This document shows, piece by piece, positions 26,315-37,470 of a stretch of 64,000 nucleotides of DNA; the first letter of the stretch is position 1; the number at the start of each line of letters is the position of its first letter. The translations under genes and the position numbers were made by a program. The stretch is from Hyaloraphidium curvatum SAG 235-1 (taxonomy: Eukaryota > Fungi > Monoblepharomycota): the NCBI GenBank assembly GCA_025558095.1, contig JAIVFI010000003.1, positions 124,001-188,000 of the forward strand, in the 5' to 3' direction. The notes beneath the pieces are model-generated. The model did no database searches and was not told the origin of the DNA. It was given only the letters and a program-made list of their open reading frames with translations.

Positions 26315-27805
26315 ATGCCGCCCAGACGGAGGCGCGTAGCAGGCGACAATGCCGCTGCGGACGACGTTCCCGGCCCGGCACCGGCGGAACCCACCGGCGA
26401 GGCGGTCCTTTGCGAGCTCCGCCGTTCCGGCCCCTCGCGCAGCAACGCCCTCCTCCAGGCCGCGCTATTCCTGTGCCTCGTCGGCTTCACGTGGCTTCTG
26501 GCCGTTGCTCCGCCCGCGGCACATGGCCTTGCCCGCACAGCGCGGCTCCCGCAGCCGCTGACGGCCATCGGCGTCTCCCACTGGACCCGCGCCGCGCCGC
26601 TGCACGCCGCAAACAGGACGCACGCGTGGCAGCTGGGCGAGATCGAGGGACGGCTGGCCGCGGCCATCGAGAACGCGGGCAAGGGTCCCGTCCTGGACGC
26701 AATTTTGGGCAGGGTGAGGGAGCTGGCCGGGCAGACCGTCGACGGAGACGCAGAAGCGGTGCTGGCCGCGCTCAGGGCGGCCAGGGCGACGACCGCGGAC
26801 CTGGACAGGGGCAGAGGCTCCCTGTCGTTCCTCAAGCGCGTGTTCAACCTCGTCAACGCCATGTGGGCCGTCGGCATCATCGGCGTCACCATCTCTCTCG
26901 CGCCGGTCCTGGCCGCGTTCCTGCCCACGATCATCGGCGCCTTGATCGGCATCCTGCGGAGCCTGTGGAGCGTGTTCGGCCCCATCATCATTCTACTCTT
27001 TGTTTACGGTTGGCGGCCTGCACTCTACCTGCTCGCGGCCTCGTCCTTTGGTTCCGTCGACGACCAAGACATCTCGGTGGACGTTCGGATCTACTCGGCC
27101 ATGCTCGTGGCCCTCCTTTCGTCGAGCGCCGCGTCGTGGACCATGGCAGAGCTGTATTCCGTCGCGGTGCTGGAACGGGAGCCGGCCAACGCCTTGGCGA
27201 TGCTCGCCCCGGGCGCGCTGCTCGCGCCGCTGGCCCACATCACCGGCTCCCGCCTCCTCGGCTTCCTCACAGTCGTCTCCATATTCTCCGCCCTCGGTGC
27301 CGGCATGCAGGCCTTCCCCGGCGGATACGTTGTCGGCTTCGGCTCCAAGAGCGCGCTTAACCGCAGCCTGGCCGCCGCCTGCATGCTCACCGTCGCCACG
27401 GCCGCGATCCAGGCCCTCGGCACCGACGCCCACCGCGCCCTCCTCGCCCCCTTCTCCCCGGGCCTGCAGACGTTCGGCGCCTCGGTGTACTACCTCGCCC
27501 TCCTCATCCGCTCCTCCTCGGTCTACATGGGCTTCCAACCTCAATTCGCGGGCGGCATGCTGGCCTCCCTCGTCCTGGGCGCGCTCGCCGGCACCGTGGG
27601 CACCGGCCTGTCGTACCTGCAGAACACCGCGTTCGTGTTCGCCTACCTGTTCGCGCTGGACGCGGCCATGTGGCTCGGGTCGGGGGTGAGCTTCTGGCTG
27701 GGGGTGCTGGTGGCCAGCTGCGGGATGGTGGGGGCCGCGTACGCCGCGCATAGGTATCCGGCGGTGCTCGAGGCGTTGTACGGCATGGTGCCGGGGTCGG
27801 GATAG
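26315..27805 (+). CDS. Hypothetical multi-pass membrane protein, intronless
   Basis: 496-aa ORF with ~11-13 hydrophobic segments and a helical loop; strong codon bias. Confidence 0.75.
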   Translation: MPPRRRRVAGDNAAADDVPGPAPAEPTGEAVLCELRRSGPSRSNALLQAALFLCLVGFTWLLAVAPPAAHGLARTARLPQPLTAIGVSHWTRAAPLHAANRTHAWQLGEIEGRLAAAIENAGKGPVLDAILGRVRELAGQTVDGDAEAVLAALRAARATTADLDRGRGSLSFLKRVFNLVNAMWAVGIIGVTISLAPVLAAFLPTIIGALIGILRSLWSVFGPIIILLFVYGWRPALYLLAASSFGSVDDQDISVDVRIYSAMLVALLSSSAASWTMAELYSVAVLEREPANALAMLAPGALLAPLAHITGSRLLGFLTVVSIFSALGAGMQAFPGGYVVGFGSKSALNRSLAAACMLTVATAAIQALGTDAHRALLAPFSPGLQTFGASVYYLALLIRSSSVYMGFQPQFAGGMLASLVLGALAGTVGTGLSYLQNTAFVFAYLFALDAAMWLGSGVSFWLGVLVASCGMVGAAYAAHRYPAVLEALYGMVPGSG

Positions 27806-28089: not shown

Positions 28090-29648
28090 ATGTTCACGGA
28101 ACGGGAATGGCTGGTCATGTTCCCTCGGGAGCCTGCCCCCTTCGCGGGGCCGTCCCTCGTCGACCGCCCCGCCGACCCCGCCAAAGCCCTCCGTGAAAGC
28201 GACCCGCTGACCCGCCGCAATTTCCTCGCTGCACTGGCGCCCTGGCCGCTCGTGCGGAACCTTGTGCGGGTGCAGCTCGCGCTGACGCCGTACGTCTCGC
28301 GCGTCGCCCTGCGGTTCGGCCCCTCGGCCCTGTTCACGGGCACCGTGCTGGCGGGTACGGTGGTCCTCAACGCGGGGACCTTCCGTGCGTTCCATACGGC
28401 GCAGCTCGCCGTCGGCATCGCGTCGGTGAGCCTCTTCTTCCTCACCACCCTGGTGATTGCCTTGTATTCGCGCGGGTTCCAGAGCCTGATCACGCTGCCG
28501 ACCTTTCGGGGGACCAGAGGGACCTCCGGGACTTCCGGATCGGCATCGGCGGAATACGGGTGGCATCCGTTTGCCACCATGGCCCGTTATCAGCAGTTGC
28601 TCTCGGACGGCTCGAAAGGACCCGTCGACAGCGATCCGGAAGCAAAAGAAAGCTCGCTCATAAATGAATCCGGAGCGTCTCTTCTCTTCCAGCACGATTC
28701 CGACGACTCCCATTGCCCTTGCTCGGATTGTACGCGAGCGCTGACGGATCGTGCCGGTCCGTTCCAGCTTCTTGAAATCAGCCTTCGGGTCTTGACCCTC
28801 GACGTCTTGGTTATGTTTGCGGTTTGGACGCCGTTTGTTTCTTTTGGGGCCGAATACTGGAGAATTTGGTGGTGTGCCCTGTTCGGCGCGTTCTTTGTTC
28901 TGAACGTGCTCGACCTGAACACCCTGAACGCTCTTGTTCGCTTCACGGACAACGTCGCCGTCATCCTTCTGAAGCAGCGGGTGCGACGCAGGGCCGTCGT
29001 CCTGGCACTGCGCGACTTCTACCGCCGGCTGAGGGCCTCGCTCGACGGAGAGGAGTCTGAGCTCGCCGATCCGGCCTCCGAACCCCATGTGGTGCTCCAC
29101 GCATTCCTGGCGGACGCTTGGCAGCGCGGATTCGTGACTTTCTCGTCGGGCGGGCTGTCGACCATAGTGATCTACTGCGTCGCGCCGACCGTTGGCGCCA
29201 TGGCCAACCTGGTGGGTGGATCGCGGACCCCGGCCCTCCGTTTCCGACCCCGTTCCAGATCGCAGGCAACTGCATCCCGGTTTGGATTCCACTCGCCTGG
29301 CTCCGATACCTCCTCCTCCTCGCCATCGACCTCGTCAACCACTCCGTGGCCAACAACGAGCTCGACGTCGTCCGCAGCATGTACGTCGACGCCCGCGCAT
29401 CCCTCCGTCTCGCGATACCGCGGGCCAAGGGCGACCTCCGTTCCCTCATGGAGGACCACGACCGCATCCTGGCCTCGCTGGAGCGCAACGAGCGCTACAG
29501 GGCGCGGTTCCTCGGGTTCGCGGTGGACTTTGCGGTTGCGAGGACGGTCGCGCTGACGCTGTTCACGGTGGGGATCGGGCTGTGGAGCGTGCTGCGGTCG
29601 TCGGGGGTGTACCTGACGGTGGAGATGGCGTGTTCATCCGATCGGTGA
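28090..29648 (+). CDS. 7TM protein, gustatory-receptor-like/DUF3537-like candidate, paralog A; intron 29212-29258
   Basis: Seven TM segments, HDSDDSHCPCSDC loop and C-terminal RARFLGFAVDFAVARTVALTLFTVGIGLW. Confidence 0.75.
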
Positions 29649-29696
29649 GCGGGAACAATAGAAGGTATTTACAGTATTGAGCGGGCAATCTGGGCT

Positions 29697-30963
29697 TTAC
29701 ACGGCAATGCTGGCTGCCAGGACAAAGACGGCGAGGGCGAGGGGAGCGGAGAAGGTTCCGGCTCCCCGGCGCCCGCTGCTCGGCACACTGCTTGCGGATG
29801 CCGACGCCGTAGCAGACGCGGTCGAAGCAGCCGCAGCAGAAGAAGAAGCCGTCGTCGACGCCGCCACGATCGTGGTCTCCGTCCCCTCCACCGCCGCGAA
29901 CGCGTTCACGTCCGCCACGGCGTACCCCAGCTTCCCCGTCAGCGTCGCCCAGAACGCCGCGTCCGTCCCCGGCTGCACGCAGACCTTGCCCCCGCACCCT
30001 TTGGTGCACTGCAGCGTCGCGTCGGTGTTCACATCGGCGCACTGCCCGTTCGCCGGCCCCGTGCAGCCCAGGTAGTACGGGGCCGCCTTGCGCGCGTGGT
30101 AGTGGTACACGATCCGGCCCTCCGTTTCGCCGAGGTTTGGGTTGCCGGCGGGGACGGGGCCCCAGTGGCCGCCGCATTCGTCGACGACGGGGGTGCTGCC
30201 GTTGATGTCGAAGTAGCCGTAGATCCCGTGGCCGTCAGAGGCGTAGCCGATGAGGGGGGAGTGGGTGGTCGAGGTGATGTTCGGGAAGTAGCAGTCGGCG
30301 GCCTGCGGCAAGGCGTCAGTGGGAGAGAACCGGGCTGCGGCGTGGCGGAATCACCTTGTGGTAGTGCTGCACGGAGTCAATGAACCCCGGGGTGACGTGG
30401 CCGCCGCACGTGAACGGGAACCCCGTATCGTCGACATCGACCCCTCCGGCGTCCGTAGGTCCGTAGATGGGCGTCCCGGCAACGAGGTACCCCAAGTCCC
30501 CGGCCTTTCCCACGGGCACGTGGTCCGCGCCGCCCGTCTCGGGGGCGATGGGCACGGAAAACGTCGCGGTCTTGGGCGACGGGCAGTCGCCGGGGTAGGC
30601 GCACAGGCACGAGCTCCACCCGAGCTTGGAGCACTCGGAGTCGGTCACGCAGTACGACTCGTTGTAGCCTTTGGGACAATAAGGATATACGGCGTAGTCC
30701 GGCAGGCTGTTTGTCGTCAGCGTCCTGTGCGTCGCGTTGGTCGACCAGACGGCCACGCGCGCGGGGAGGTCGCAGGGGTCCGTGTGCAGCCCGGACTTGG
30801 GGAGGTACGCGCGGCCGGCCCAGCTCGACACGTTGGCGGAGCACGAGGCGCCGCCCGCGCCGCCCATGCCGCCGGGGCCGCCGGGTGGCGGACCGACGGG
30901 TTGGGCGGCGGCGGCGGCGGCGAGGGCGAGGACGAGGACGCCGGCGAGTTTGAACGAAGCCAT
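29697..30963 (-). CDS. Secreted, probably GPI-anchored Cys-rich YHYH-domain protein; intron 30303-30354
   Basis: Signal peptide; CGGH..QHYH and DECGGH..VYHYH; IGYASDGHGIYG; Ser/Ala-rich stalk and hydrophobic tail. Confidence 0.8.
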
Positions 30964-31213
30964 GGCGGTTCGGAAGGCGTTGCGGACCTGCGCCGGTCGT
31001 TCGAGCCCCGCCTTTTTGAGCCGGGACGTTGCTGATGCTTCGGGTCCAGCGATTGTTCCCGGCTGGACTCAGCGTCCGTGCACAGCACCCGTCACCGCGC
31101 TCCCCCGAGGGTTTCCGCGCCGTCCCCCACACGTCATGCACTCAGCGACCTCTCCTCCGAAGCTATTGGGTTTTTGACGTGGCGGGCGTCGCAGGACCTG
31201 GAATGGGAGTTGA

Positions 31214-31659
31214 CTGCTCGCTTTTATATCTGTGGGATGTGGCTGTGCGCTCCCCTCGGGGAGTCCCCAGGGAGTCCCCAGGGAGTCGCCAGGGAGTCCC
31301 CAGGGAGTCGCCAGGGAGTCCCCAGGGAGTCGCCAGGGAGTCGCCAGGGAGTCTCCGGGGAGTCGCTTACGAAGCAAGCAATAATCACGCGCGTGGGCGA
31401 GGGCGTCGATCCCCAACAGGAGGCGACGGAGGCGACGGAGGCGAGTGATGGAGGCGATGGAAACGACGGGCGGATTGTTGGGGATCAGACGCCCTCGCCC
31501 ACGCGGGCTCTCGTTTTGGGATCGCCGGGGCTAGTGTGGAGGAACTGCGCAGTCGTTTGCTGCGCAGTCGGCTAAAGCAGTCGCGACGGCGTCGCAACGG
31601 CGTCGCAACGGCGTCGCGACGGCGCACAGCCACATCCCACACATATATAAAGCGCGCAG
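31214..31659. mobile_element. MITE-like element with terminal inverted repeats, an inner inverted repeat and minisatellites
   Basis: TGTGGGATGTGGCTGTGCGC (31231-31250) is the exact reverse complement of 31622-31641, extending imperfectly to ~37 bp. Inner IR at 31390-31418 / 31476-31505. Confidence 0.75.
31259..31366 (+). repeat. 11-bp minisatellite GGGAGTC(C/G)CCA x10
   Basis: GGAGTC recurs every 11 nt from 31260 to 31359. Confidence 0.95.
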
Positions 31660-31989
31660 CTGCGCACGTAGAATCTTTACCGAAGTCACTCATCTCTGAG
31701 CCCGCCGTGCGAAAGGCCGCAGCCGTCACTCCGAACCCTTGAGCTACACGTCGCCAAGCGCGGTCCCGCGCTGTCACGGATACCAGCCCGCGCCCGGACC
31801 ATAAAGGGCCGCCAGCTTGTAGAGGCGAAATCACCGTAGTCAGAGAGGCTGCCCTCACTCTTGCTGTGACCGACGATCGGCGAGGCCGTGGCGACGCTGT
31901 GGCCGAGGACGGGTTCCAGTTGAGACGGTCCGCCAAATCGTCACTCCATAAGACCCCCATTCCGGCCTTCCCGGCCCGCGGGCCCGGCA

Positions 31990-34122
31990 ATGGACGGCTC
32001 CTCGCCTTGGGGCTCGCCCAGCGGCGCGGGCGGGGCGGGCGGCGGGCGGCCGCCGGGGTCGCCGGGCGGGCGCGGAGGGCGACGTGCCCCGCCGCGGCCG
32101 CCATCGAGGGATCACCCGCTCGACCGGTTCTACAACGCGGCCCGCCCGCATGTTCCGAGCCCGTTAAATACCCCGGCAAGTGGCGGAGCGGCATTCGTAG
32201 GAACCGGCGGCGGGAGCGGGGCCGATGGGTCGCCCCCCCCGCGCCCCCAGAACCCGGCGCCGCAGACGGCAGCGGGCCCCTCGAACGCCCCGCGACCGTC
32301 AATTTTTGGTCTGCAAGGACGGACCGCGGCCGCTCCCGCGCGCATGGGGCTGCAGCCGGACCTGGGGCCGGCGGAAGGGGCAGACGGCCCGCCGGCAAAG
32401 CGCCGCAAGGCAAGCGGCGGGCTGCGCGTGGATATCGACCTCTCCGACGATGACTTCGACGCGGGAGCGGCACAGCCACTATCGGCCCCGGTGACCGGGC
32501 CCGCTCCGCCGGCGGGCCCTCTTCCGTTGGCCCGGAGCGCGACGACCGGCGCCCTCCCCAGGCCCTCCATCGCCACGCGGACATCCAGCGCCCCGGTCAT
32601 TACCTCGTCGGGCGCGGTGCTTAACTTGCAGCGGGGTTACGGCGGCAGGGACGGCCTCCTGGTCGCGATCCGGAGCGGGAGCCTGTTGGCGGCCGAGCAG
32701 ATCATGCTGCTGCTGCGAGAGCACTGCCCGGAGGCGGACCCGGCGCTGCTCCAGGAAGCCGAGGCCGCGTACGCGTCGCAGATCGTTCCCACCAACCCCG
32801 CGGGATCCCCCACCGCCCGCCCACCAGCCACCAAGAGGTCGGCGTCCCTCAACCTTCTCGGCAATCTCGGCAAGAGGGATACCGCGGCCCTTTCGGCAAG
32901 CGCCGCCCGGGCAGGGCTCGTTGTCCAGCCTGCGCCGGTGGTTCCGGCGCCAAACGGCGCTGCCGTTCCCAACGCGCGTACCCTCGGTACTTTGCCGGCG
33001 TTCTTTGTTTCCCCACTGGGACGGCAGCTCGCTGCGATGAGCACGGCAACCCCCCCTGCCGGCGCCGGTCGGAAGGATCCCGCGCCTCCTTCAGCCGCCT
33101 TTGCTCCGGCCGGGCTCTTCAACCGGCAGGCTGCGCAGGCCGTTCCCGCGCCGGCCGCCGATGCCCCGCACCTAGCTCTGGCTCTGGCGGGCGGCGGCGC
33201 GGCGCGGCACGTTGCCCCCGCGGTGGACCTGAGCTCTTTGCGGCAGGCCCGTGCGGGGAACGCGGCGGCAGGCGGCGCGGTTGCTTCGCCGGCAAAGCAG
33301 GGTGCCGCGGCGGGCGGTTCCGCGAACGCCGACCCGCAGCGCGCCGTGCCTTTCGACATCGACTCTTACATGTCGCAGGTTCGCGCGGCTCGATCCGCGG
33401 GCCGCAACGCGGCGGCTGGCGGAGCACAGCCGGCGGCGGCAAACCAGGGGACCGTGGCGCCCGCAGCCTTGCAGCTTGGCCCCCCCGCTCAGGTCCAGGG
33501 CAAGGCGCCCGCGCAGCAGCAGCTTCCGAGGAGTGCCCAGCTGCAGCACCTGCAGACGCAGCTGAGCCCGTTTCAGGTGGAGGTAGCTGCGCAGGCGTCG
33601 CAGCATGCGCGCCTGGCGCAGCGGCAGGGTACCGCCAAGGGAGGCACCGCGGGGCATGCTACGGCACCTGCCGCTCGCCCCGCCGCCCCCGCCGCCCCCA
33701 ACCCCGCTCCCGGCCCATCCGACCCGCACCGCGAGCTCCGCCACCTCCTGGACGAATCGCACCAGCCGCACGCCGAAGCCATCGCGAGCCTCCGCTCCAT
33801 GGGCTTCCCCCTCGTCCGCATCCTCGCGGTGCTGGACTCCATCCTCGCCCGCGGGGCGCACCCGGGCCTGGAGGCGGTGCTGGACGGCCTCACCGAGCCG
33901 GCACCGGCGGAACAGGAGGCCCCCGCCCCTCCCCCGCCGGAACCGGCAAAGGAAGCGCGGAACGAGTGCGTGATCTGCCTCTCGGCGCCGTGCACCCGCG
34001 CGGTGATCCCGTGCGGACACCAGTCGCTGTGCGAGGACTGCGTGGGGATGGCGGCGGGGATGGGGGAGTGCCCCGTGTGCAGGGGGGAGTGGAAGGGGAC
34101 GCTGAGGATATTCCAGGCATGA
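31990..34122 (+). CDS. Low-complexity protein with C-terminal UBA-like and RING (zf-C3HC4_3) domains; putative E3 ligase
   Basis: LRSMGFP (UBA); ECVICL...PCGHQSLCEDC...CPVCR. Confidence 0.8.
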   Translation: MDGSSPWGSPSGAGGAGGGRPPGSPGGRGGRRAPPRPPSRDHPLDRFYNAARPHVPSPLNTPASGGAAFVGTGGGSGADGSPPPRPQNPAPQTAAGPSNAPRPSIFGLQGRTAAAPARMGLQPDLGPAEGADGPPAKRRKASGGLRVDIDLSDDDFDAGAAQPLSAPVTGPAPPAGPLPLARSATTGALPRPSIATRTSSAPVITSSGAVLNLQRGYGGRDGLLVAIRSGSLLAAEQIMLLLREHCPEADPALLQEAEAAYASQIVPTNPAGSPTARPPATKRSASLNLLGNLGKRDTAALSASAARAGLVVQPAPVVPAPNGAAVPNARTLGTLPAFFVSPLGRQLAAMSTATPPAGAGRKDPAPPSAAFAPAGLFNRQAAQAVPAPAADAPHLALALAGGGAARHVAPAVDLSSLRQARAGNAAAGGAVASPAKQGAAAGGSANADPQRAVPFDIDSYMSQVRAARSAGRNAAAGGAQPAAANQGTVAPAALQLGPPAQVQGKAPAQQQLPRSAQLQHLQTQLSPFQVEVAAQASQHARLAQRQGTAKGGTAGHATAPAARPAAPAAPNPAPGPSDPHRELRHLLDESHQPHAEAIASLRSMGFPLVRILAVLDSILARGAHPGLEAVLDGLTEPAPAEQEAPAPPPPEPAKEARNECVICLSAPCTRAVIPCGHQSLCEDCVGMAAGMGECPVCRGEWKGTLRIFQA

Positions 34123-34198
34123 TGGCCGGGGGCGGGAGTCTATTCGGTGTGCGGTTGCGGGAATGGGAACACGCGCTGTGCCTTTCGTCCGTTTTGGG

Positions 34199-35463
34199 TC
34201 AACGGAACAGGCCCTCCAGGAACCGGTTTCCCGCACCGTGGCGCGCTGCCGCGTCCTGCCAGACGGGGCTTCTGCGCAGGCCGTTGGCCGTGGCGAAGGC
34301 TTCCACCTTGGCTTTCGGCGCGTTCGCCCGTATCACCGCGTCGGTAAAGTGGTGGGCGGAGCGGGCGCTCTGCGCCACCGGAACAGGGTCGTTGCGAGGT
34401 CCGACGGGGCCGAGCGGGGCCAGAGGGTCGACGAGGGGGATCGGTCCCTTGCGGAACAGGAGGAAGACTATGACGTAGCTCAGGAGAAAGGGCCGCTGCC
34501 TGAAGGCGTCGTAAAGGGTCCGCGCCGCCGATGCGCCGGCCCTGTAGAGGGCGCCGTGGAACAGTTCCAAGGCATCCTTGGGGGAGTCGGCGTACGCGCG
34601 GATATCGTCCAGCACGAGGACCTTGTCGTCCAGCGAAAGCACGCCGGAAAGTGCCAGGGAGCGGCCGACCTCCTGGGCATCACCGAGGGGGTGTTGGATC
34701 ATCCACTCGAGGGCCAGGGCGAGGAAGCGGATGCGCGTCCAGCCGTCGGTTGTCGAACCGCCCGCCCAGGCGTGGATGGTGGCAAGCCCGGACGCGAGCT
34801 CGTCCCTGCGAAACTGGTTCACGTCCCCGCGGTGCAGGTGGGCGGCGACGTCGAGGCCCACGTGGAGGTGTGAGGGGGCGTTCCAACTGCTCCACAGGGC
34901 CGCGCGAGCCACTGTCTCGACCAGGACATCCCCGGAGAGGCCAGATCGGCGCATGAGCACCCGAAGCTTGCCCGCCAGTGCCGACGGCAGGGTTCGGCCG
35001 ATGGCATCCGGTGCCTGCCCTGCAAACACGACCCGGGCTGCCGCACCGGCGAGCTCCTCCTCGTCCATCGCCATCCCGGCCACCAGCCGCGATGCTGCCG
35101 CAATCGACTCGTCCGGGAAAAAAGCCAGAGCGGCGTCGGCCTTTTCCGAGCCCGGCGGGACGCCCGCCGCGCGGAGCAGCCTTCCGAGCGAAAACGGCCG
35201 CACCGGGCCGAGGTCCAGGTGCACACGGCGCCGGGGGGCTCCACGCGGAACGCGCCGCGCTCGCCGCGCAGCAGGTCGAGCAGCTCGGCGGGGGAGGGGA
35301 GCGATTTGACGTGTTCAATAAAGAGGTCCGAAGCGGCGGGGCCGACGGCGCGGCAGAGGGAACGCAGGCGGTACAGCGCGCGTAGGGACAAACGGGATGC
35401 AATCTGACGGAAAATCTCGGGCGGGAGTGACGCGAGGGTAGTCGATTCCTCGACGGCGGCCAT
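34199..35463 (-). pseudogene. F-box family X paralog 2 (one frameshift)
   Basis: LASLPPEIFRQI. TGCACCTG at ~35222 lacks one C relative to the CHLD of paralog 1; otherwise collinear. Confidence 0.75.
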
Positions 35464-35855
35464 CGCTGCAGCTTCGGATGGGAGAACGCGTCGGGGACGG
35501 TTGTCCCATTGTTCAGACGGCCCACGAAAGGAAGTGATGCGATGAGATTCGATGGCACTTGCCCTCGGCGTCTCCATCAGAATGGCTTGATGACTCGAGC
35601 ACCATGAATGGGCTGATGAGCCGATCGATTCTCGGCGCCCCAGGAGGGTCGAGCCGGAACAATCCATGATCAGCTTCCCTCGGGACCTTCTTCCCATCCA
35701 TCACCCTAGAATTCGTACGTCATGAGATCAACAGGAAGGCGAACTAGCAGGCTCGAAGATGATGAAGGGGGAAACGTGGGCACATCTCCGATCCGTGCGC
35801 AATCCCTACTAGAGGATCAGCCATCATTCGTCCCCACCCGTGCCCGCCGCTCGCC

Positions 35856-37470
35856 ATGGCCTCCGAAACAACCGACCCATTGTGGCCCGCGGACTTTACA
35901 CCTTCCGTCTGGGCCGCCCTGTTCCCCGCGTACCCGTCCCCCCCGCCGCCGCCCGACATGCCCGCTGAGCTCGCGCGCGTCGCGTCGCCCGCGGTTGCCG
36001 CGCAGGCCCGCGCCGAACGGCCCATGACGCTCGAGCAGCTGCTGGCTGGGATCCCGGACGCGCCGTTGCAGCGGGCCGTGGTGCGGCTGCAGCTCGCGGT
36101 CGTGGGCAGCTCCGGCGGGGACTCGGGGTTCTTCTTCGCCACGGTGGTCTACGTGGCGCTGCACGTGGGGCTCATGCCCGCCCTGGCTTGGGTGGGCAAC
36201 TGGTATTATGGGCTGTTCGGCACGAGGCAGCTGGTGGCAATGACGGTGGGGTACGTCGTGCAGGACGCGCTCTGGGAGGTCGCGCTCCTGCGCGGCCGCG
36301 CCTTTGCGAGGAAGGAGGAAAAGGTCCTCGTGGGCACCCTCCAAGAGCGGTTAGCGCTGGACAACCATCTCCTGGCCGGCGTCGCGAGGTACCGCCTCCT
36401 GCTTGAGGATTCCTCGGACCCCGAAGCCGCCTCGGGCGAACTTGCCCGCTCGCTCTTGCGGCACGAGCCGGGCGACCCGCTGTGTTCCTGTCCGAAAGCC
36501 GGGTGCGCGGGCTGGCATCTGCATGCGGCGCCGGCGCTTAGCCTGGCCACCTTCGTCGGGGTCCAGTGCGGCAAGCTGCTCGCCTACGTGGTCATCTCCT
36601 TCTGGACCGTTCTGGTGACGTTCCAGGGATTCACGTGGAGCTCTCCCTGGGCTGCCGCTCTCGCGGCGTGCTCGGTCGCCTACTGCGCCCTCTACGTGTT
36701 CTCCGTCGGGGTAGCCTTCAACGGCGCCATGTCCAACGTGGCGGTCTTCGGGCTGGAGATGCGGCTCCGGCGCCGCGCGATGAAGCGCTGCCTGGACGGG
36801 CTAATCGCGCGGATGGAAGCCCAGGCGGCGGGTTCCGAACCGCCGGGCAAGCAGGTTGTCGAATCCGAGCCGTACGTCGTGCTCCACGCGGCTCTCGCGG
36901 CGGCGTGGAGCTCGAGGCTCTCGGTATCGGAAAGCAACCGCTTCGTCGTCACCATGGGATTCCTGGGGGACTTTGTCGCCATTGCCATCGTGATGGTCGG
37001 TCGCGTTCCATCTCTGCTTGTCTTCCGCCCCGCCGGCCCAGCCAACTGACCCCTTCACTCCGGCGCCCATCCAGTTTGCTTCTTCCTGCATCACCGCCCC
37101 CTTCCTCGCCTCCTTCCTCCTCAACGCGGCCCTAATCTTCGTTTTCGACCTCGCCAACCTCGCCGCGGCCTACTCCGAGACCTCCCGCATCGCGGCGCTC
37201 TACTCCTCCGCGGCCTACAGCCTGCGCTCCCTCGCCCTGCGCGCCGGCCCGGGGTCGGCGCTGGCGGCCGCGGCCGGGCTGCACGAACGGATCCTGCGCG
37301 GGTTCGCGGACGTCGACGCGTACAGGGCGACGTTCTTCGGGGTGCCGGTGACGCCGGGGCTGGTGCGGACGGCGGCGGTGACGGCGTTCACGATCGGGGT
37401 GGGCATGTGGAGCGTGCTCAGGGGGGCGGGGATCGGGGTCACGATCGAGATGGCGTGCCCGGGTGTGTAG
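35856..37470 (+). CDS. 7TM protein, gustatory-receptor-like/DUF3537-like candidate, paralog B; intron 36996-37074
   Basis: HEPGDPLCSCPKAGC loop, EPYVVLH and C-terminal YRATFFGVPVTPGLVRTAAVTAFTIGVGMWSVLR...EMAC. Intron position and phase match paralog A. Confidence 0.75.

What the first reader, a model, noticed from the sequence alone, without database searches (positions are those of the whole stretch)
28090..37470. Two divergent paralogs of a gustatory-receptor/DUF3537-like 7TM channel family with a His/Cys loop motif
Seen: genes 28090-29648 and 35856-37470 share seven TM segments, a long basic helical TM4-TM5 loop (RRRA..L...EPxVVLH), an HxxxDxxCxCxx(xx)C motif between TM2 and TM3, an identical phase-0 intron, and the tail YRAxFxGxxVxxxxxRTxAxTxFTxGxGxWSVLR...EMAC. 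Known: insect GR/OR-type 7TM ion channels and plant DUF3537 end in a split TM7 preceded by a similar F-G-x-x-V/D segment, and such homologs are reported in some chytrids. Inference: an expanded, uncharacterised chemosensory channel family with an added cytoplasmic metal- or redox-sensing site.
Basis: partly seen in the sequence, partly recalled or inferred. Interest (0 to 1): 0.8.

Follow-up and report, generated by a model that had tools for sequence, protein, structure and literature searches.

The report
Fungal insect-receptor-like channel gene pair
The two genes are intact members of a family of roughly 450 very diverse membrane proteins in the early-diverging aquatic fungus Hyaloraphidium curvatum whose predicted shape is that of insect smell and taste receptor ion channels, with an extra invariant His/Cys (probably zinc) site that insect receptors lack; no repertoire of this size has been described outside animals.

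Summary
Genes 28090-29648 and 35856-37470 are paralogs (30% and 38% identity in the two exons). They share the seven hydrophobic segments, the His/Cys motif, the basic helix, the tail and a phase-0 intron at the same site. An RNA-derived contig proves the 79-nt intron of gene 2.

The genome is Hyaloraphidium curvatum (Monoblepharomycota). The family has about 400-500 copies: 517 raw candidates in the genome, and 472 profile hits among 1.84 billion representative proteins. All are annotated "hypothetical" and none has a Pfam or PDB sequence match. At least one other fungus (GC 54.5%) and one metagenome scaffold also carry members.

H193/C200/C202/C207 in intracellular loop 1, and the C379/C506 pair on the outer face, are about 100% conserved. 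TM7b is the most conserved segment and TM1-6 the most variable.

Channel activity, tetramer formation and ligand sensing remain inference.

This scan found the same family before on other windows of this genome. The His/Cys site and the Cys pair did not turn up in my three word look-ups of those notes.

The parts
28090..29211 (+). Gene 1, exon 1 (374 aa): cytoplasmic N-terminus, TM1-TM5, intracellular loop 1 with the His/Cys motif, TM4/TM5 cytoplasmic extensions
   Evidence: ORF and start codon; family profile positions 6-369, E 4e-100; paralogy with gene 2
28693..28731 (+). Gene 1 His/Cys motif HDSDDSHCPCSDC (H-x3-D-x2-C-x-C-x2-C), between TM2 and TM3
   Evidence: Coordinates. The H and the three C are 99-100% conserved in 147 family members. 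The loop is K/R-rich, hence cytoplasmic.
29212..29258 (+). Gene 1 intron, 47 nt, GT..AG, phase 0, in extracellular loop 3 just before the invariant Cys
   Evidence: Sequence. The reading frame changes between the two profile matches. It is the same site as the RNA-proven intron of gene 2. Not itself checked with reads.
29259..29648 (+). Gene 1, exon 2 (129 aa + stop): EL3 Cys, TM6 with its extension, TM7a, hairpin, TM7b, C-terminal Cys
   Evidence: Profile positions 362-493, E 2e-54; 38% identical to gene 2 exon 2; finds at least 150 copies in the genome
35856..36995 (+). Gene 2, exon 1 (380 aa): N-terminus to TM5
   Evidence: ORF; profile positions 1-362, E 3e-88; RNA-derived contig covers 36052-36994
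36462..36506 (+). Gene 2 His/Cys motif HEPGDPLCSCPKAGC (H-x3-D-x2-C-x-C-x4-C)
36996..37074 (+). Gene 2 intron, 79 nt, GT..AG, phase 0
   Evidence: A contig of run X1 joins 36994 to 37074, skipping 79 nt with GT..AG ends (cut +1). This rules out the alternative acceptor at 37041.
37075..37470 (+). Gene 2, exon 2 (131 aa + stop): EL3 Cys, TM6, TM7a, hairpin, TM7b, C-terminal Cys. It carries Tyr at the otherwise invariant Asn406 position.
   Evidence: Profile positions 363-494, E 4e-49; residue table; contig covers 37074-37231

Best explanation
Both genes encode intact members of a lineage-restricted, anciently diversified family of about 450 genes in Hyaloraphidium curvatum. The family is also present in at least one other chytrid-grade fungus.

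Shown here: the proteins have the fold of the 7TM ion-channel (7TMIC) superfamily, whose founders are insect odorant and gustatory receptors. They have seven TM helices and an N-in/C-out topology. TM4, TM5 and TM6 extend far into the cytoplasm as an 'anchor' bundle, and TM7 is split into a cytoplasmic 7a and a membrane 7b by a beta-hairpin.

Inferred: subunits assemble through the anchor bundle into tetramers whose central pore is lined by TM7b. TM7b is the most conserved segment. It carries a Thr/Thr/Thr/Gly/Ser stripe on one helical face and has Arg at both ends. The highly variable membrane parts of TM1-TM6 would form paralog-specific ligand pockets, so the repertoire would act as an array of ligand-gated channels sensing many extracellular chemicals.

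Two family-specific additions are also inferred. The first is a cytoplasmic H-x6-C-x-C-x(2-4)-C site in a roughly 80-residue intracellular loop 1, most likely a structural Zn site and possibly a metal or redox sensor. The second is an extracellular disulfide between the invariant Cys of loop TM5-TM6 and the invariant C-terminal Cys, which would tie the outer end of the pore helix to its own subunit.
For: Paralogy and gene models. Gene 2 is transcribed and spliced.

Family size: 517 candidates, of which 150 were scored and all had E < 3e-17. There are 472 profile hits, 307 of them at E <= 1e-30, in 1.84e9 representatives. Of the 30 hits I looked up, 26 are 'hypothetical protein [Hyaloraphidium curvatum]'.

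Anchor bundle and split TM7: helices 281-311, 333-377, 382-431, 437-456, a hairpin, then 473-497, read against the hydropathy profile.

Topology.

Conservation: H193, C200, C202, C207, C379, N406, T485 and C506 are 98-100% conserved. TM7b entropy is 1.70 against about 3.0 for TM1-6. Median pairwise identity is 28%. The His/Cys stretch is modelled at pLDDT 96-97 although it is coil. Strand 379-381 is paired with strand 499-501.
Against: No sequence method links the family to any known 7TMIC. Pfam, the PDB profile search and the ESM features are all blank or weak. The genome scans with the two Pfam models were also blank, but their own controls did not ring, so they show nothing.

The animal TM7 motif (T/S)Yhhhhh(Q/K/E)(F/L/M) is not present beyond the Thr.

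The fold was predicted for a paralog (L011, 25-40% identical to the window's exons), not for the window's spliced proteins.

The tetramer test gave no verdict.

I had no model coordinates, so neither the geometry of the His/Cys site nor the Cys-Cys distance was measured.

The organism is non-motile (my own knowledge), so what it would do with 450 chemoreceptors is unclear. Conserved Arg at both ends of TM7b is not what cation-selective insect receptors show.
Confidence: 0.6

Rival explanations
1. The proteins have the 7TMIC fold but do a different job. They are not ligand-gated chemosensory channels. Instead they act, for example, as intracellular-membrane proteins like PHTF, as light, temperature or oxidant sensors like LITE-1 or Gr28b, or as a diversified recognition/defence repertoire. 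On this reading the His/Cys site would be the real sensor (metal or redox) and the variable helices would not be ligand pockets.
For: The authors of the 7TMIC concept themselves say that channel function is unknown for most members (PMC9998090). The organism is non-motile (my own knowledge). The invariant cytoplasmic H/C3 site and the long intracellular loop 1 are unique to this family. No oligomer support was obtained.
Against: The conservation pattern mirrors that of insect receptors: the pore helix and anchor are conserved while TM1-6 are hypervariable. There are 450 paralogs at a median 28% identity, which fits many different ligands better than one physical stimulus.
Confidence: 0.25
2. 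The resemblance is convergent. This is an unrelated lineage-specific seven-helix family that happens to pack like OR/GR proteins, so nothing about 7TMIC mechanism carries over.
Against: The alignments are colinear and cover 85-93% of 15 different OR/GR chains, whereas every unrelated hit covers only the long-helix bundle. The rare features all coincide: N-in topology, three long cytoplasmic extensions, and a split TM7 with a hairpin. The AF2 weights used predate, to my knowledge, any solved 7TMIC structure, so the fold was not copied.
Confidence: 0.1
3. The family is a GPCR-like, N-out seven-helix receptor family.
For: There are seven TM segments and the family is large.
Against: Charge bias gives N-in. 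No GPCR appears among the listed rows of the Foldseek, VIA-align or Atlas searches. All the long loops lie on the N-terminal side.
Confidence: 0.02
4. The genes are repeat- or transposon-borne or decaying ORFs rather than functional genes.
For: Copy number is very high. A few copies carry in-frame stops (6 of 150). Some hits are duplicated between contigs (C17/C47, C30/C48).
Against: Copies are 24-33% identical yet keep about 30 near-invariant residues. Both window genes keep all of them but one. Gene 2 is transcribed and correctly spliced. The neighbours of ten copies are ordinary, unrelated genes.
Confidence: 0.03

Closest known systems
Insect odorant and gustatory receptors (e.g. AaegOR10 8V00, AgamOR28 8V3C, MhOR5 7LIC, BmGr9 8VC1, DmGr43a 8JM9)
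   Different: There is no detectable sequence similarity (7-13% identity in the structural alignments). The TM7 motif TYhhhhhQF is absent. Intracellular loop 1 is about 80 residues long and carries an invariant H/C3 site. There is an invariant Cys pair in EL3 and the C-terminus, and a conserved N-terminal cytoplasmic motif. The host is a unicellular fungus rather than animal neurons.
Gustatory-receptor-like proteins of unicellular eukaryotes (SpunGRL1 and SpalGRL1 of the chytrid Spizellomyces, TtraGRL1-6, Vitrella GRLs; Benton et al. 2020, PMC7746228)
   Same: They come from early-diverging fungi and protists and have 7TMIC secondary-structure features. The TM7 motif is largely degenerate (one of four positions in the chytrid proteins).
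   Different: Those organisms have one to six copies per genome, and the proteins were found by sequence profiles. Here there are about 450 copies and no profile link. Orthology with SpunGRL1 was not testable, because no reference sequence was available to the tools.
Plant DUF3537 (PF12056)
   Same: It is a 7TMIC-fold family with long intracellular loops and an unrecognisable TM7 motif.
   Different: The PF12056 profile matches neither the proteins nor the genome, though that genome scan's control was uninformative. Plant families have 4-12 members.
PHTF (Class-B 7TMIC)
   Different: PHTF is a deeply conserved family of low copy number with long insertions. This family is lineage-restricted and hyper-expanded. 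Which 7TMIC class it belongs to was not tested.

Membership tests
7TMIC superfamily (criteria of Benton & Himmel 2023, PMC9998090) | Seven transmembrane helices | tested here: met
   The family-averaged hydropathy profile and the DSSP of the AF2 model give TM1 80-98, TM2 110-130, TM3 222-243, TM4 255-272, TM5 356-377, TM6 382-399 and TM7b 472-497 in L011 numbering.
7TMIC superfamily (criteria of Benton & Himmel 2023, PMC9998090) | Intracellular N-terminus, with intracellular loops longer than extracellular ones | tested here: met
   Mean K+R per region in 43 paralogs is 11.1 / 8.9 / 10.0 / 8.3 for the N-terminus, IL1, IL2 and IL3, against 1.0 / 0.5 / 0.0 / 0.5 for EL1, EL2, EL3 and the C-terminus. 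Loop lengths are 69-105 against 4-12 residues. This rests on the positive-inside rule only, not on a dedicated predictor or an experiment.
7TMIC superfamily (criteria of Benton & Himmel 2023, PMC9998090) | Long TM4, TM5 and TM6 projecting below the bundle (anchor domain) | tested here: met
   Helices 255-275 plus 281-311, 333-377 (45 residues) and 382-431 (50 residues). Only about 18-22 residues of each are hydrophobic. I had no coordinates, so the packing itself was not inspected.
7TMIC superfamily (criteria of Benton & Himmel 2023, PMC9998090) | TM7 split into a cytoplasmic 7a and a membrane 7b | tested here: met
   Helix 437-456, short paired strands at 465-470, then helix 473-497.
7TMIC superfamily (criteria of Benton & Himmel 2023, PMC9998090) | Homotetramer or heterotetramer with a TM7b-lined pore; ligand-gated cation conductance | not testable with these tools
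   The four-copy prediction of residues 261-509 gave no verdict because the partner's fold was uncertain.
Animal GR/GRL family | TM7 motif (T/S)Yhhhhh(Q/K/E)(F/L/M) | tested here: not met
   The family consensus in the C-terminal half of TM7b is T485-V-x-V-G-L-W-S-V/I. Only the Thr (98%) fits, and there is no Tyr and no Q/K/E. The paper calls the motif diagnostic but not definitive.
Pfam 7tm_7 (PF08395), 7tm_6 (PF02949), DUF3537 (PF12056) | Match to the family profile above the gathering score | tested here: not met
   No hit at E up to 10 for the four window exons, or up to 1 for the 47 alignment members. Nothing was found in the six-frame genome scans with PF08395 or PF12056, but their controls did not ring, so those two are uninformative.
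Structural zinc site (His + 3 Cys) | Four invariant ligands closely spaced, in a reducing compartment, in a well-ordered local structure | tested here: inconclusive
   H193 is 100% conserved, C200 100%, C202 99% and C207 99% in 147 members. The loop is cytoplasmic by charge bias, and pLDDT is 96-97 across the motif. Ligand geometry and metal binding were not testable.

The most novel reading that the evidence does not exclude
Hyaloraphidium and its kin evolved, independently of animals, an animal-scale repertoire of about 450 OR/GR-fold ligand-gated channels that serves as the chemical-sensing system of a non-motile unicellular fungus. Each subunit carries a cytoplasmic zinc or redox module that couples channel gating to the cell's metal or redox state.
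Probability: 0.3. Interest if true: 0.9.

Novelty: new variant of a known kind. Interest (0 to 1): 0.8.

Why it matters
Insect odorant and gustatory receptors were long thought to be an animal invention. Homologs outside animals have so far been reported in small numbers per genome: one in Spizellomyces, six in Thecamonas, and 4-12 DUF3537 genes in plants (PMC7746228).

A family of about 450 genes with this fold takes up about 2% of a 32-Mb fungal genome. It would be the largest such repertoire outside animals. It would also give a genetically simple, unicellular system for asking what these channels did before nervous systems existed.

The invariant cytoplasmic His/Cys site and the extracellular Cys pair are concrete, mutable handles that insect receptors lack. 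No paper in the searchable library mentions Hyaloraphidium together with chemosensory receptors or ion channels.

Tried and rejected
Searches and tests that led nowhere:
- Word-indexed protein search with exon 1 found only the window's own ORF. With the alignment it found only five Hyaloraphidium proteins. It is blind to 25-30% identical paralogs.
- Pfam, and a PDB sequence-profile search: nothing.
- ESM-Atlas feature search: best score 0.85 to unnamed bacterial and archaeal clusters, below the level the tool treats as meaningful.
- Six-frame genome scans with PF08395 and PF12056: nothing, and the tool's own controls did not ring, so this is uninformative.
- Tetramer test (four copies of residues 261-509): no verdict. 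The alignment was not used and the fold was uncertain, so it counts neither for nor against.
With the gene 1 C-terminal exon it found no metagenome relative.

Hypotheses considered and rejected:
- Constant pairing of these genes with F-box genes. The F-box gene next to gene 2 is real, but the neighbours at nine other loci are unrelated: three are identifiable ordinary enzymes and six have no Pfam match.
- GPCR-type topology.
- Alternative acceptor at 37041 for the gene 2 intron, rejected by the RNA contig.
- Recent tandem duplication of the two window genes. Gene 2 ranks only about 120th of 150 hits to the gene 1 C-terminal exon.
Full report
OBSERVATION

The window is high-GC eukaryotic DNA (62-75% GC in 2-kb windows).

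- Gene 1 runs from the ATG at 28090 to 29211, skips a 47-nt GT..AG intron (29212-29258, phase 0), and resumes at 29259, ending at the stop at 29646-29648 (503 aa).
- Gene 2 runs from 35856 to 36995, skips 36996-37074 (79 nt, GT..AG, phase 0), and ends at 37470 (511 aa).
- The first exons are 30% identical (E 1e-15) and the second exons 38% identical (E 3e-26).
- A six-frame scan of the whole window with the family profile finds only these two copies.

EXPRESSION AND SPLICING

One public run (X1) holds the locus. Its contigs carry Illumina adapter ends and cover gene bodies only. One contig lies on 36052-36994 and continues at 37074-37231, skipping 79 nt with GT..AG ends. Gene 2 is therefore transcribed and spliced at the predicted site, and the alternative acceptor at 37041 is excluded.

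The gene 1 intron is inferred from three things: the reading-frame change, homology, and the same break at profile position 362/363. Reads could be laid only once, on 5,901 letters, and I chose the gene 2 side.

Among the 30 best-matching loci elsewhere in the genome:
- at least 13 further copies have their reading frame broken at the same profile position;
- 11 are broken at a second site (about position 254-256);
- 8 are uninterrupted single exons.

The shared intron is thus a family feature, not a peculiarity of this pair. These breaks are read as introns, but only the one in gene 2 was verified with RNA.

WHOSE GENOME, AND HOW BIG IS THE FAMILY

The gene 1 C-terminal exon finds 517 first-look candidates in the window's own 31.9-Mb assembly. 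The 150 that were scored all have E < 3e-17 and lie on nearly every contig.

A profile of 43 full-length single-exon paralogs plus the four window exons (alignment A1) was searched against 1.84 billion representative proteins. It finds 472 proteins at E <= 1e-3, 422 at E <= 1e-10 and 307 at E <= 1e-30.

I looked up 30 of these:
- 26 are NCBI records named 'hypothetical protein DFJ74DRAFT_... [Hyaloraphidium curvatum]', all singleton clusters. Many are letter-for-letter the ORFs I had cut from the assembly.
- The organism is therefore Hyaloraphidium curvatum (Monoblepharomycota).

The family has roughly 400-500 members, or about 0.7 Mb of coding sequence, which is about 2% of the genome. A few hits are duplicated between contigs (C17/C47, C30/C48) and 6 of 150 carry an in-frame stop, so the count of intact distinct genes is somewhat lower.

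The two window genes are not each other's nearest relatives. Gene 2 ranks about 120th among the hits to gene 1's second exon.

NOT QUITE RESTRICTED TO ONE SPECIES

I picked library hits with atypical amino-acid composition. Four of them turned out not to be NCBI H. curvatum records.

- Three mutually divergent paralogs (P0085, P0051, P0069) lie on 15-74-kb contigs of the Logan assembly of SRR26194948.
- One cluster (P0129, P0152) lies on an ENA metagenome scaffold (ERZ28593542), with copies in JGI and Logan.

Those contigs have 54.5% GC against about 67% here. They carry fungal-type neighbours, including a YVC1/TRPY1 channel. A neighbouring PLP enzyme has Gonapodya, another monoblepharid, as its best named relative at 49% identity.

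All four keep the His/Cys motif. All but the 3'-cut P0129 also keep the tail, which its cluster-mate P0152 shows. One contig holds a tandem pair, whose second copy is broken at the 254/256 site.

The family therefore predates H. curvatum and exists in at least one other chytrid-grade fungus. Whether Gonapodya itself has it could not be seen, because only the best 150 profile hits are listed.

FOLD

No sequence method names the family: Pfam on the exons and on all alignment members, and a PDB sequence profile, were all blank.

AlphaFold2 with alignment A1 folded the single-exon paralog L011:376-1902 (509 aa, which is P0005). It is 28% and 40% identical to the gene 1 exons and 25% and 33% identical to the gene 2 exons. 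The model has mean pLDDT 90.6 and pTM 0.90.

Three structure searches agree:
- Foldseek against the PDB puts BmGr9, DmGr43a and AgamOR28 first. E-values are weak (0.02-0.05) and TM-scores low (0.24-0.35), but the probability is 0.96-0.99.

The ESM-Atlas shape search adds unnamed cnidarian and echinoderm clusters at TM 0.54/0.66 and 0.55/0.64. These are probably animal GRLs, but that is my inference.

To my knowledge the AF2 weights used were trained before any OR/GR structure was released, so the fold was not recalled from a template.

ARCHITECTURE AND TOPOLOGY

Family-averaged hydropathy laid on the model's secondary structure gives seven membrane segments: 80-98, 110-130, 222-243, 255-272, 356-377, 382-399 and 472-497.

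- TM4 continues as helix 281-311. TM5 is the end of a 45-residue helix (333-377). TM6 is the start of a 50-residue helix (382-431).
- Helix 437-456 is followed by short paired strands and then by the last membrane helix, 473-497.
- These are the anchor-domain extensions and the TM7a/hairpin/TM7b split, which the literature lists as the hallmarks of the fold.
- In 43 paralogs the N-terminus and the loops after TM2, TM4 and TM6 are 69-105 residues long and carry 8-11 Lys+Arg each. The other loops and the C-terminus are 4-12 residues long and carry 0-1.

The topology is therefore N-in, C-out, the reverse of GPCRs.

WHAT IS CONSERVED

In 147 near-full-length members the median pairwise identity is 28% (5th-95th percentile 24-33%). 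This is an old diversification, not a recent burst.

- The membrane parts of TM1-TM6 are the most variable (column entropy 2.9-3.2 bits). TM7b is the most conserved (1.70 bits).
- TM7b carries a small/polar stripe on one face: T478, T482, T485 (98%), G489 and S492, spaced i, +4, +7, +11, +14. It is bracketed by R477 (93%) and R495 (92%).
- This is the pattern of insect receptors: a conserved pore helix and anchor, with a variable ligand-pocket region.
- Near-invariant residues also include H193 (100%), D197 (94%), C200 (100%), C202 (99%) and C207 (99%) in intracellular loop 1, C379 (100%) in the four-residue TM5-TM6 loop, N406 (100%), G468 (97%) in the hairpin, and C506 (99%) near the C-terminus.
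- Both window genes keep these, with one exception: gene 2 has Tyr at the Asn406 position.

THE HIS/CYS MOTIF

The motif lies in a family-specific loop of about 80 residues on the K/R-rich, hence cytoplasmic, side. It ends three residues before the helix that contains TM3 begins. Although it is coil, it is modelled at pLDDT 96-97.

One His and three Cys within 15 residues, invariant across about 150 sequences at 28% identity, in a reducing compartment, is most simply a tetrahedral Zn site. My estimate is about 60% for a structural site. A regulatory metal or redox role is possible but unsupported.

C379 and C506 are both on the outer face. The model pairs strand 379-381 with strand 499-501. 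A disulfide tying the C-terminal tail, and so the outer end of TM7b, to the TM5-TM6 loop is likely.

MECHANISM

What is shown:
- the fold;
- the topology (by charge bias);
- the conservation pattern;
- the size and age of the family;
- transcription and splicing of gene 2.

What is inferred by analogy with solved OR/GR tetramers:
- assembly through the anchor bundle;
- a central pore lined by TM7b;
- ligand pockets in the variable TM1-6 bundle;
- hence a large array of ligand-gated channels.

The tetramer test (four copies of residues 261-509) returned no verdict and is not evidence either way. The conserved Arg residues at both ends of TM7b differ from cation-selective insect receptors, so selectivity should not be assumed.

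COMPARISON AND NOVELTY

Published non-animal members of this superfamily come in small numbers per genome: one in each Spizellomyces species, six in Thecamonas and in Vitrella, and 4-12 DUF3537 genes in plants (PMC7746228). Later structure-based surveys extend the superfamily to PHTF, kinetoplastids and prokaryotes.

None of the 7TMIC papers mentions Hyaloraphidium. No paper in the library combines that name with 'chemosensory' or 'ion channel'.

I therefore file the family as a new, hyper-expanded, sequence-orphan variant of a known fold superfamily. It is not a member of the GR/GRL or DUF3537 sequence families, whose defining profiles and TM7 motif it fails.

EARLIER NOTES OF THIS SCAN

The same family has already been reported by this scan from many other windows of this genome, with the same reading and similar counts. 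One note mentioned an uncultured organism, which I confirmed independently.

The His/Cys site and the Cys pair did not turn up in my three word look-ups of those notes; two of those look-ups included 'zinc' and returned nothing that held all the words. Another note described F-box genes interleaved with the 7TM genes here. The F-box gene at 34199-35697 is real, but the neighbours at nine other paralog loci are unrelated, so there is no constant partner.

LIMITS

All database and structure work used single exons by reference, or single-exon paralogs.

Inside local scripts I concatenated the two exon translations read from window.fa. This was only to compute hydropathy and motif coordinates and to rank ORFs already fetched.

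The fold is that of a paralog. It transfers to genes 1 and 2 through their full-length match to the family profile (E 4e-100 and 2e-54 for gene 1; 3e-88 and 4e-49 for gene 2).

Noticed in passing
window 28090-29556: The only database protein for gene 1 (P0001, 488 aa) is the unspliced ORF. Its last 114 residues are read-through of the intron in the wrong frame, so that model lacks TM6, TM7 and the conserved tail.
   Followed up: partly
window 37150-37152 region (gene 2, residue aligned to Asn406 of L011): Gene 2 has Tyr where all 147 other family members examined have Asn, in the cytoplasmic extension of TM6. The gene is nevertheless transcribed and spliced.
   Followed up: partly
L071, L073, L074 (Logan SRR26194948) and L072 (ENA ERZ28593542): Family members with the same His/Cys motif occur in another organism with 54.5% GC and fungal neighbours (YVC1/TRPY1). 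A neighbouring enzyme has Gonapodya as its best named relative. L074 carries a tandem pair whose second copy is broken at the family's 254/256 site.
   Followed up: partly
window 31990-34122 (+): A 710-aa Ala/Pro-rich ORF ends in a Cys/His-rich stretch that looks like a RING finger (read by eye, not scanned). RNA-derived contigs cover 32104-33099 and 33299-34108, so it is expressed.
   Followed up: no
window 34199-35697 (-): This gene has an F-box-like match just under Pfam's cut-off (PF12937, E 5e-5) between the two 7TM genes. Only a 152-nt RNA contig lies on it. Neighbours at nine other loci of the 7TM family are unrelated genes, so the pairing is local.
   Followed up: partly
window 26315-27805 (+): A 496-aa intronless polytopic membrane ORF lies directly upstream of gene 1. 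It is not a member of the 7TM family: the profile scan does not hit it.
   Followed up: no
G000 C17:659818-660189 = C47:105289-105660; C17:638895 = C47:84364; C30:61805 = C48:17354: Pairs of hits have identical scores on different contigs (L019 and L020 give identical profile matches). This suggests duplicated or haplotype contigs in the assembly, which slightly inflates copy counts.
   Followed up: no
Family N-terminus (L011 residues 11-50; gene 1 at about 28093-28230): There is a conserved cytoplasmic N-terminal motif (F..EWLA.FP ... P.DPA..R...PL; P21 is 97% conserved), modelled at pLDDT 94 for residues 11-20. It has no known counterpart in insect receptors and its function is unknown.
   Followed up: no
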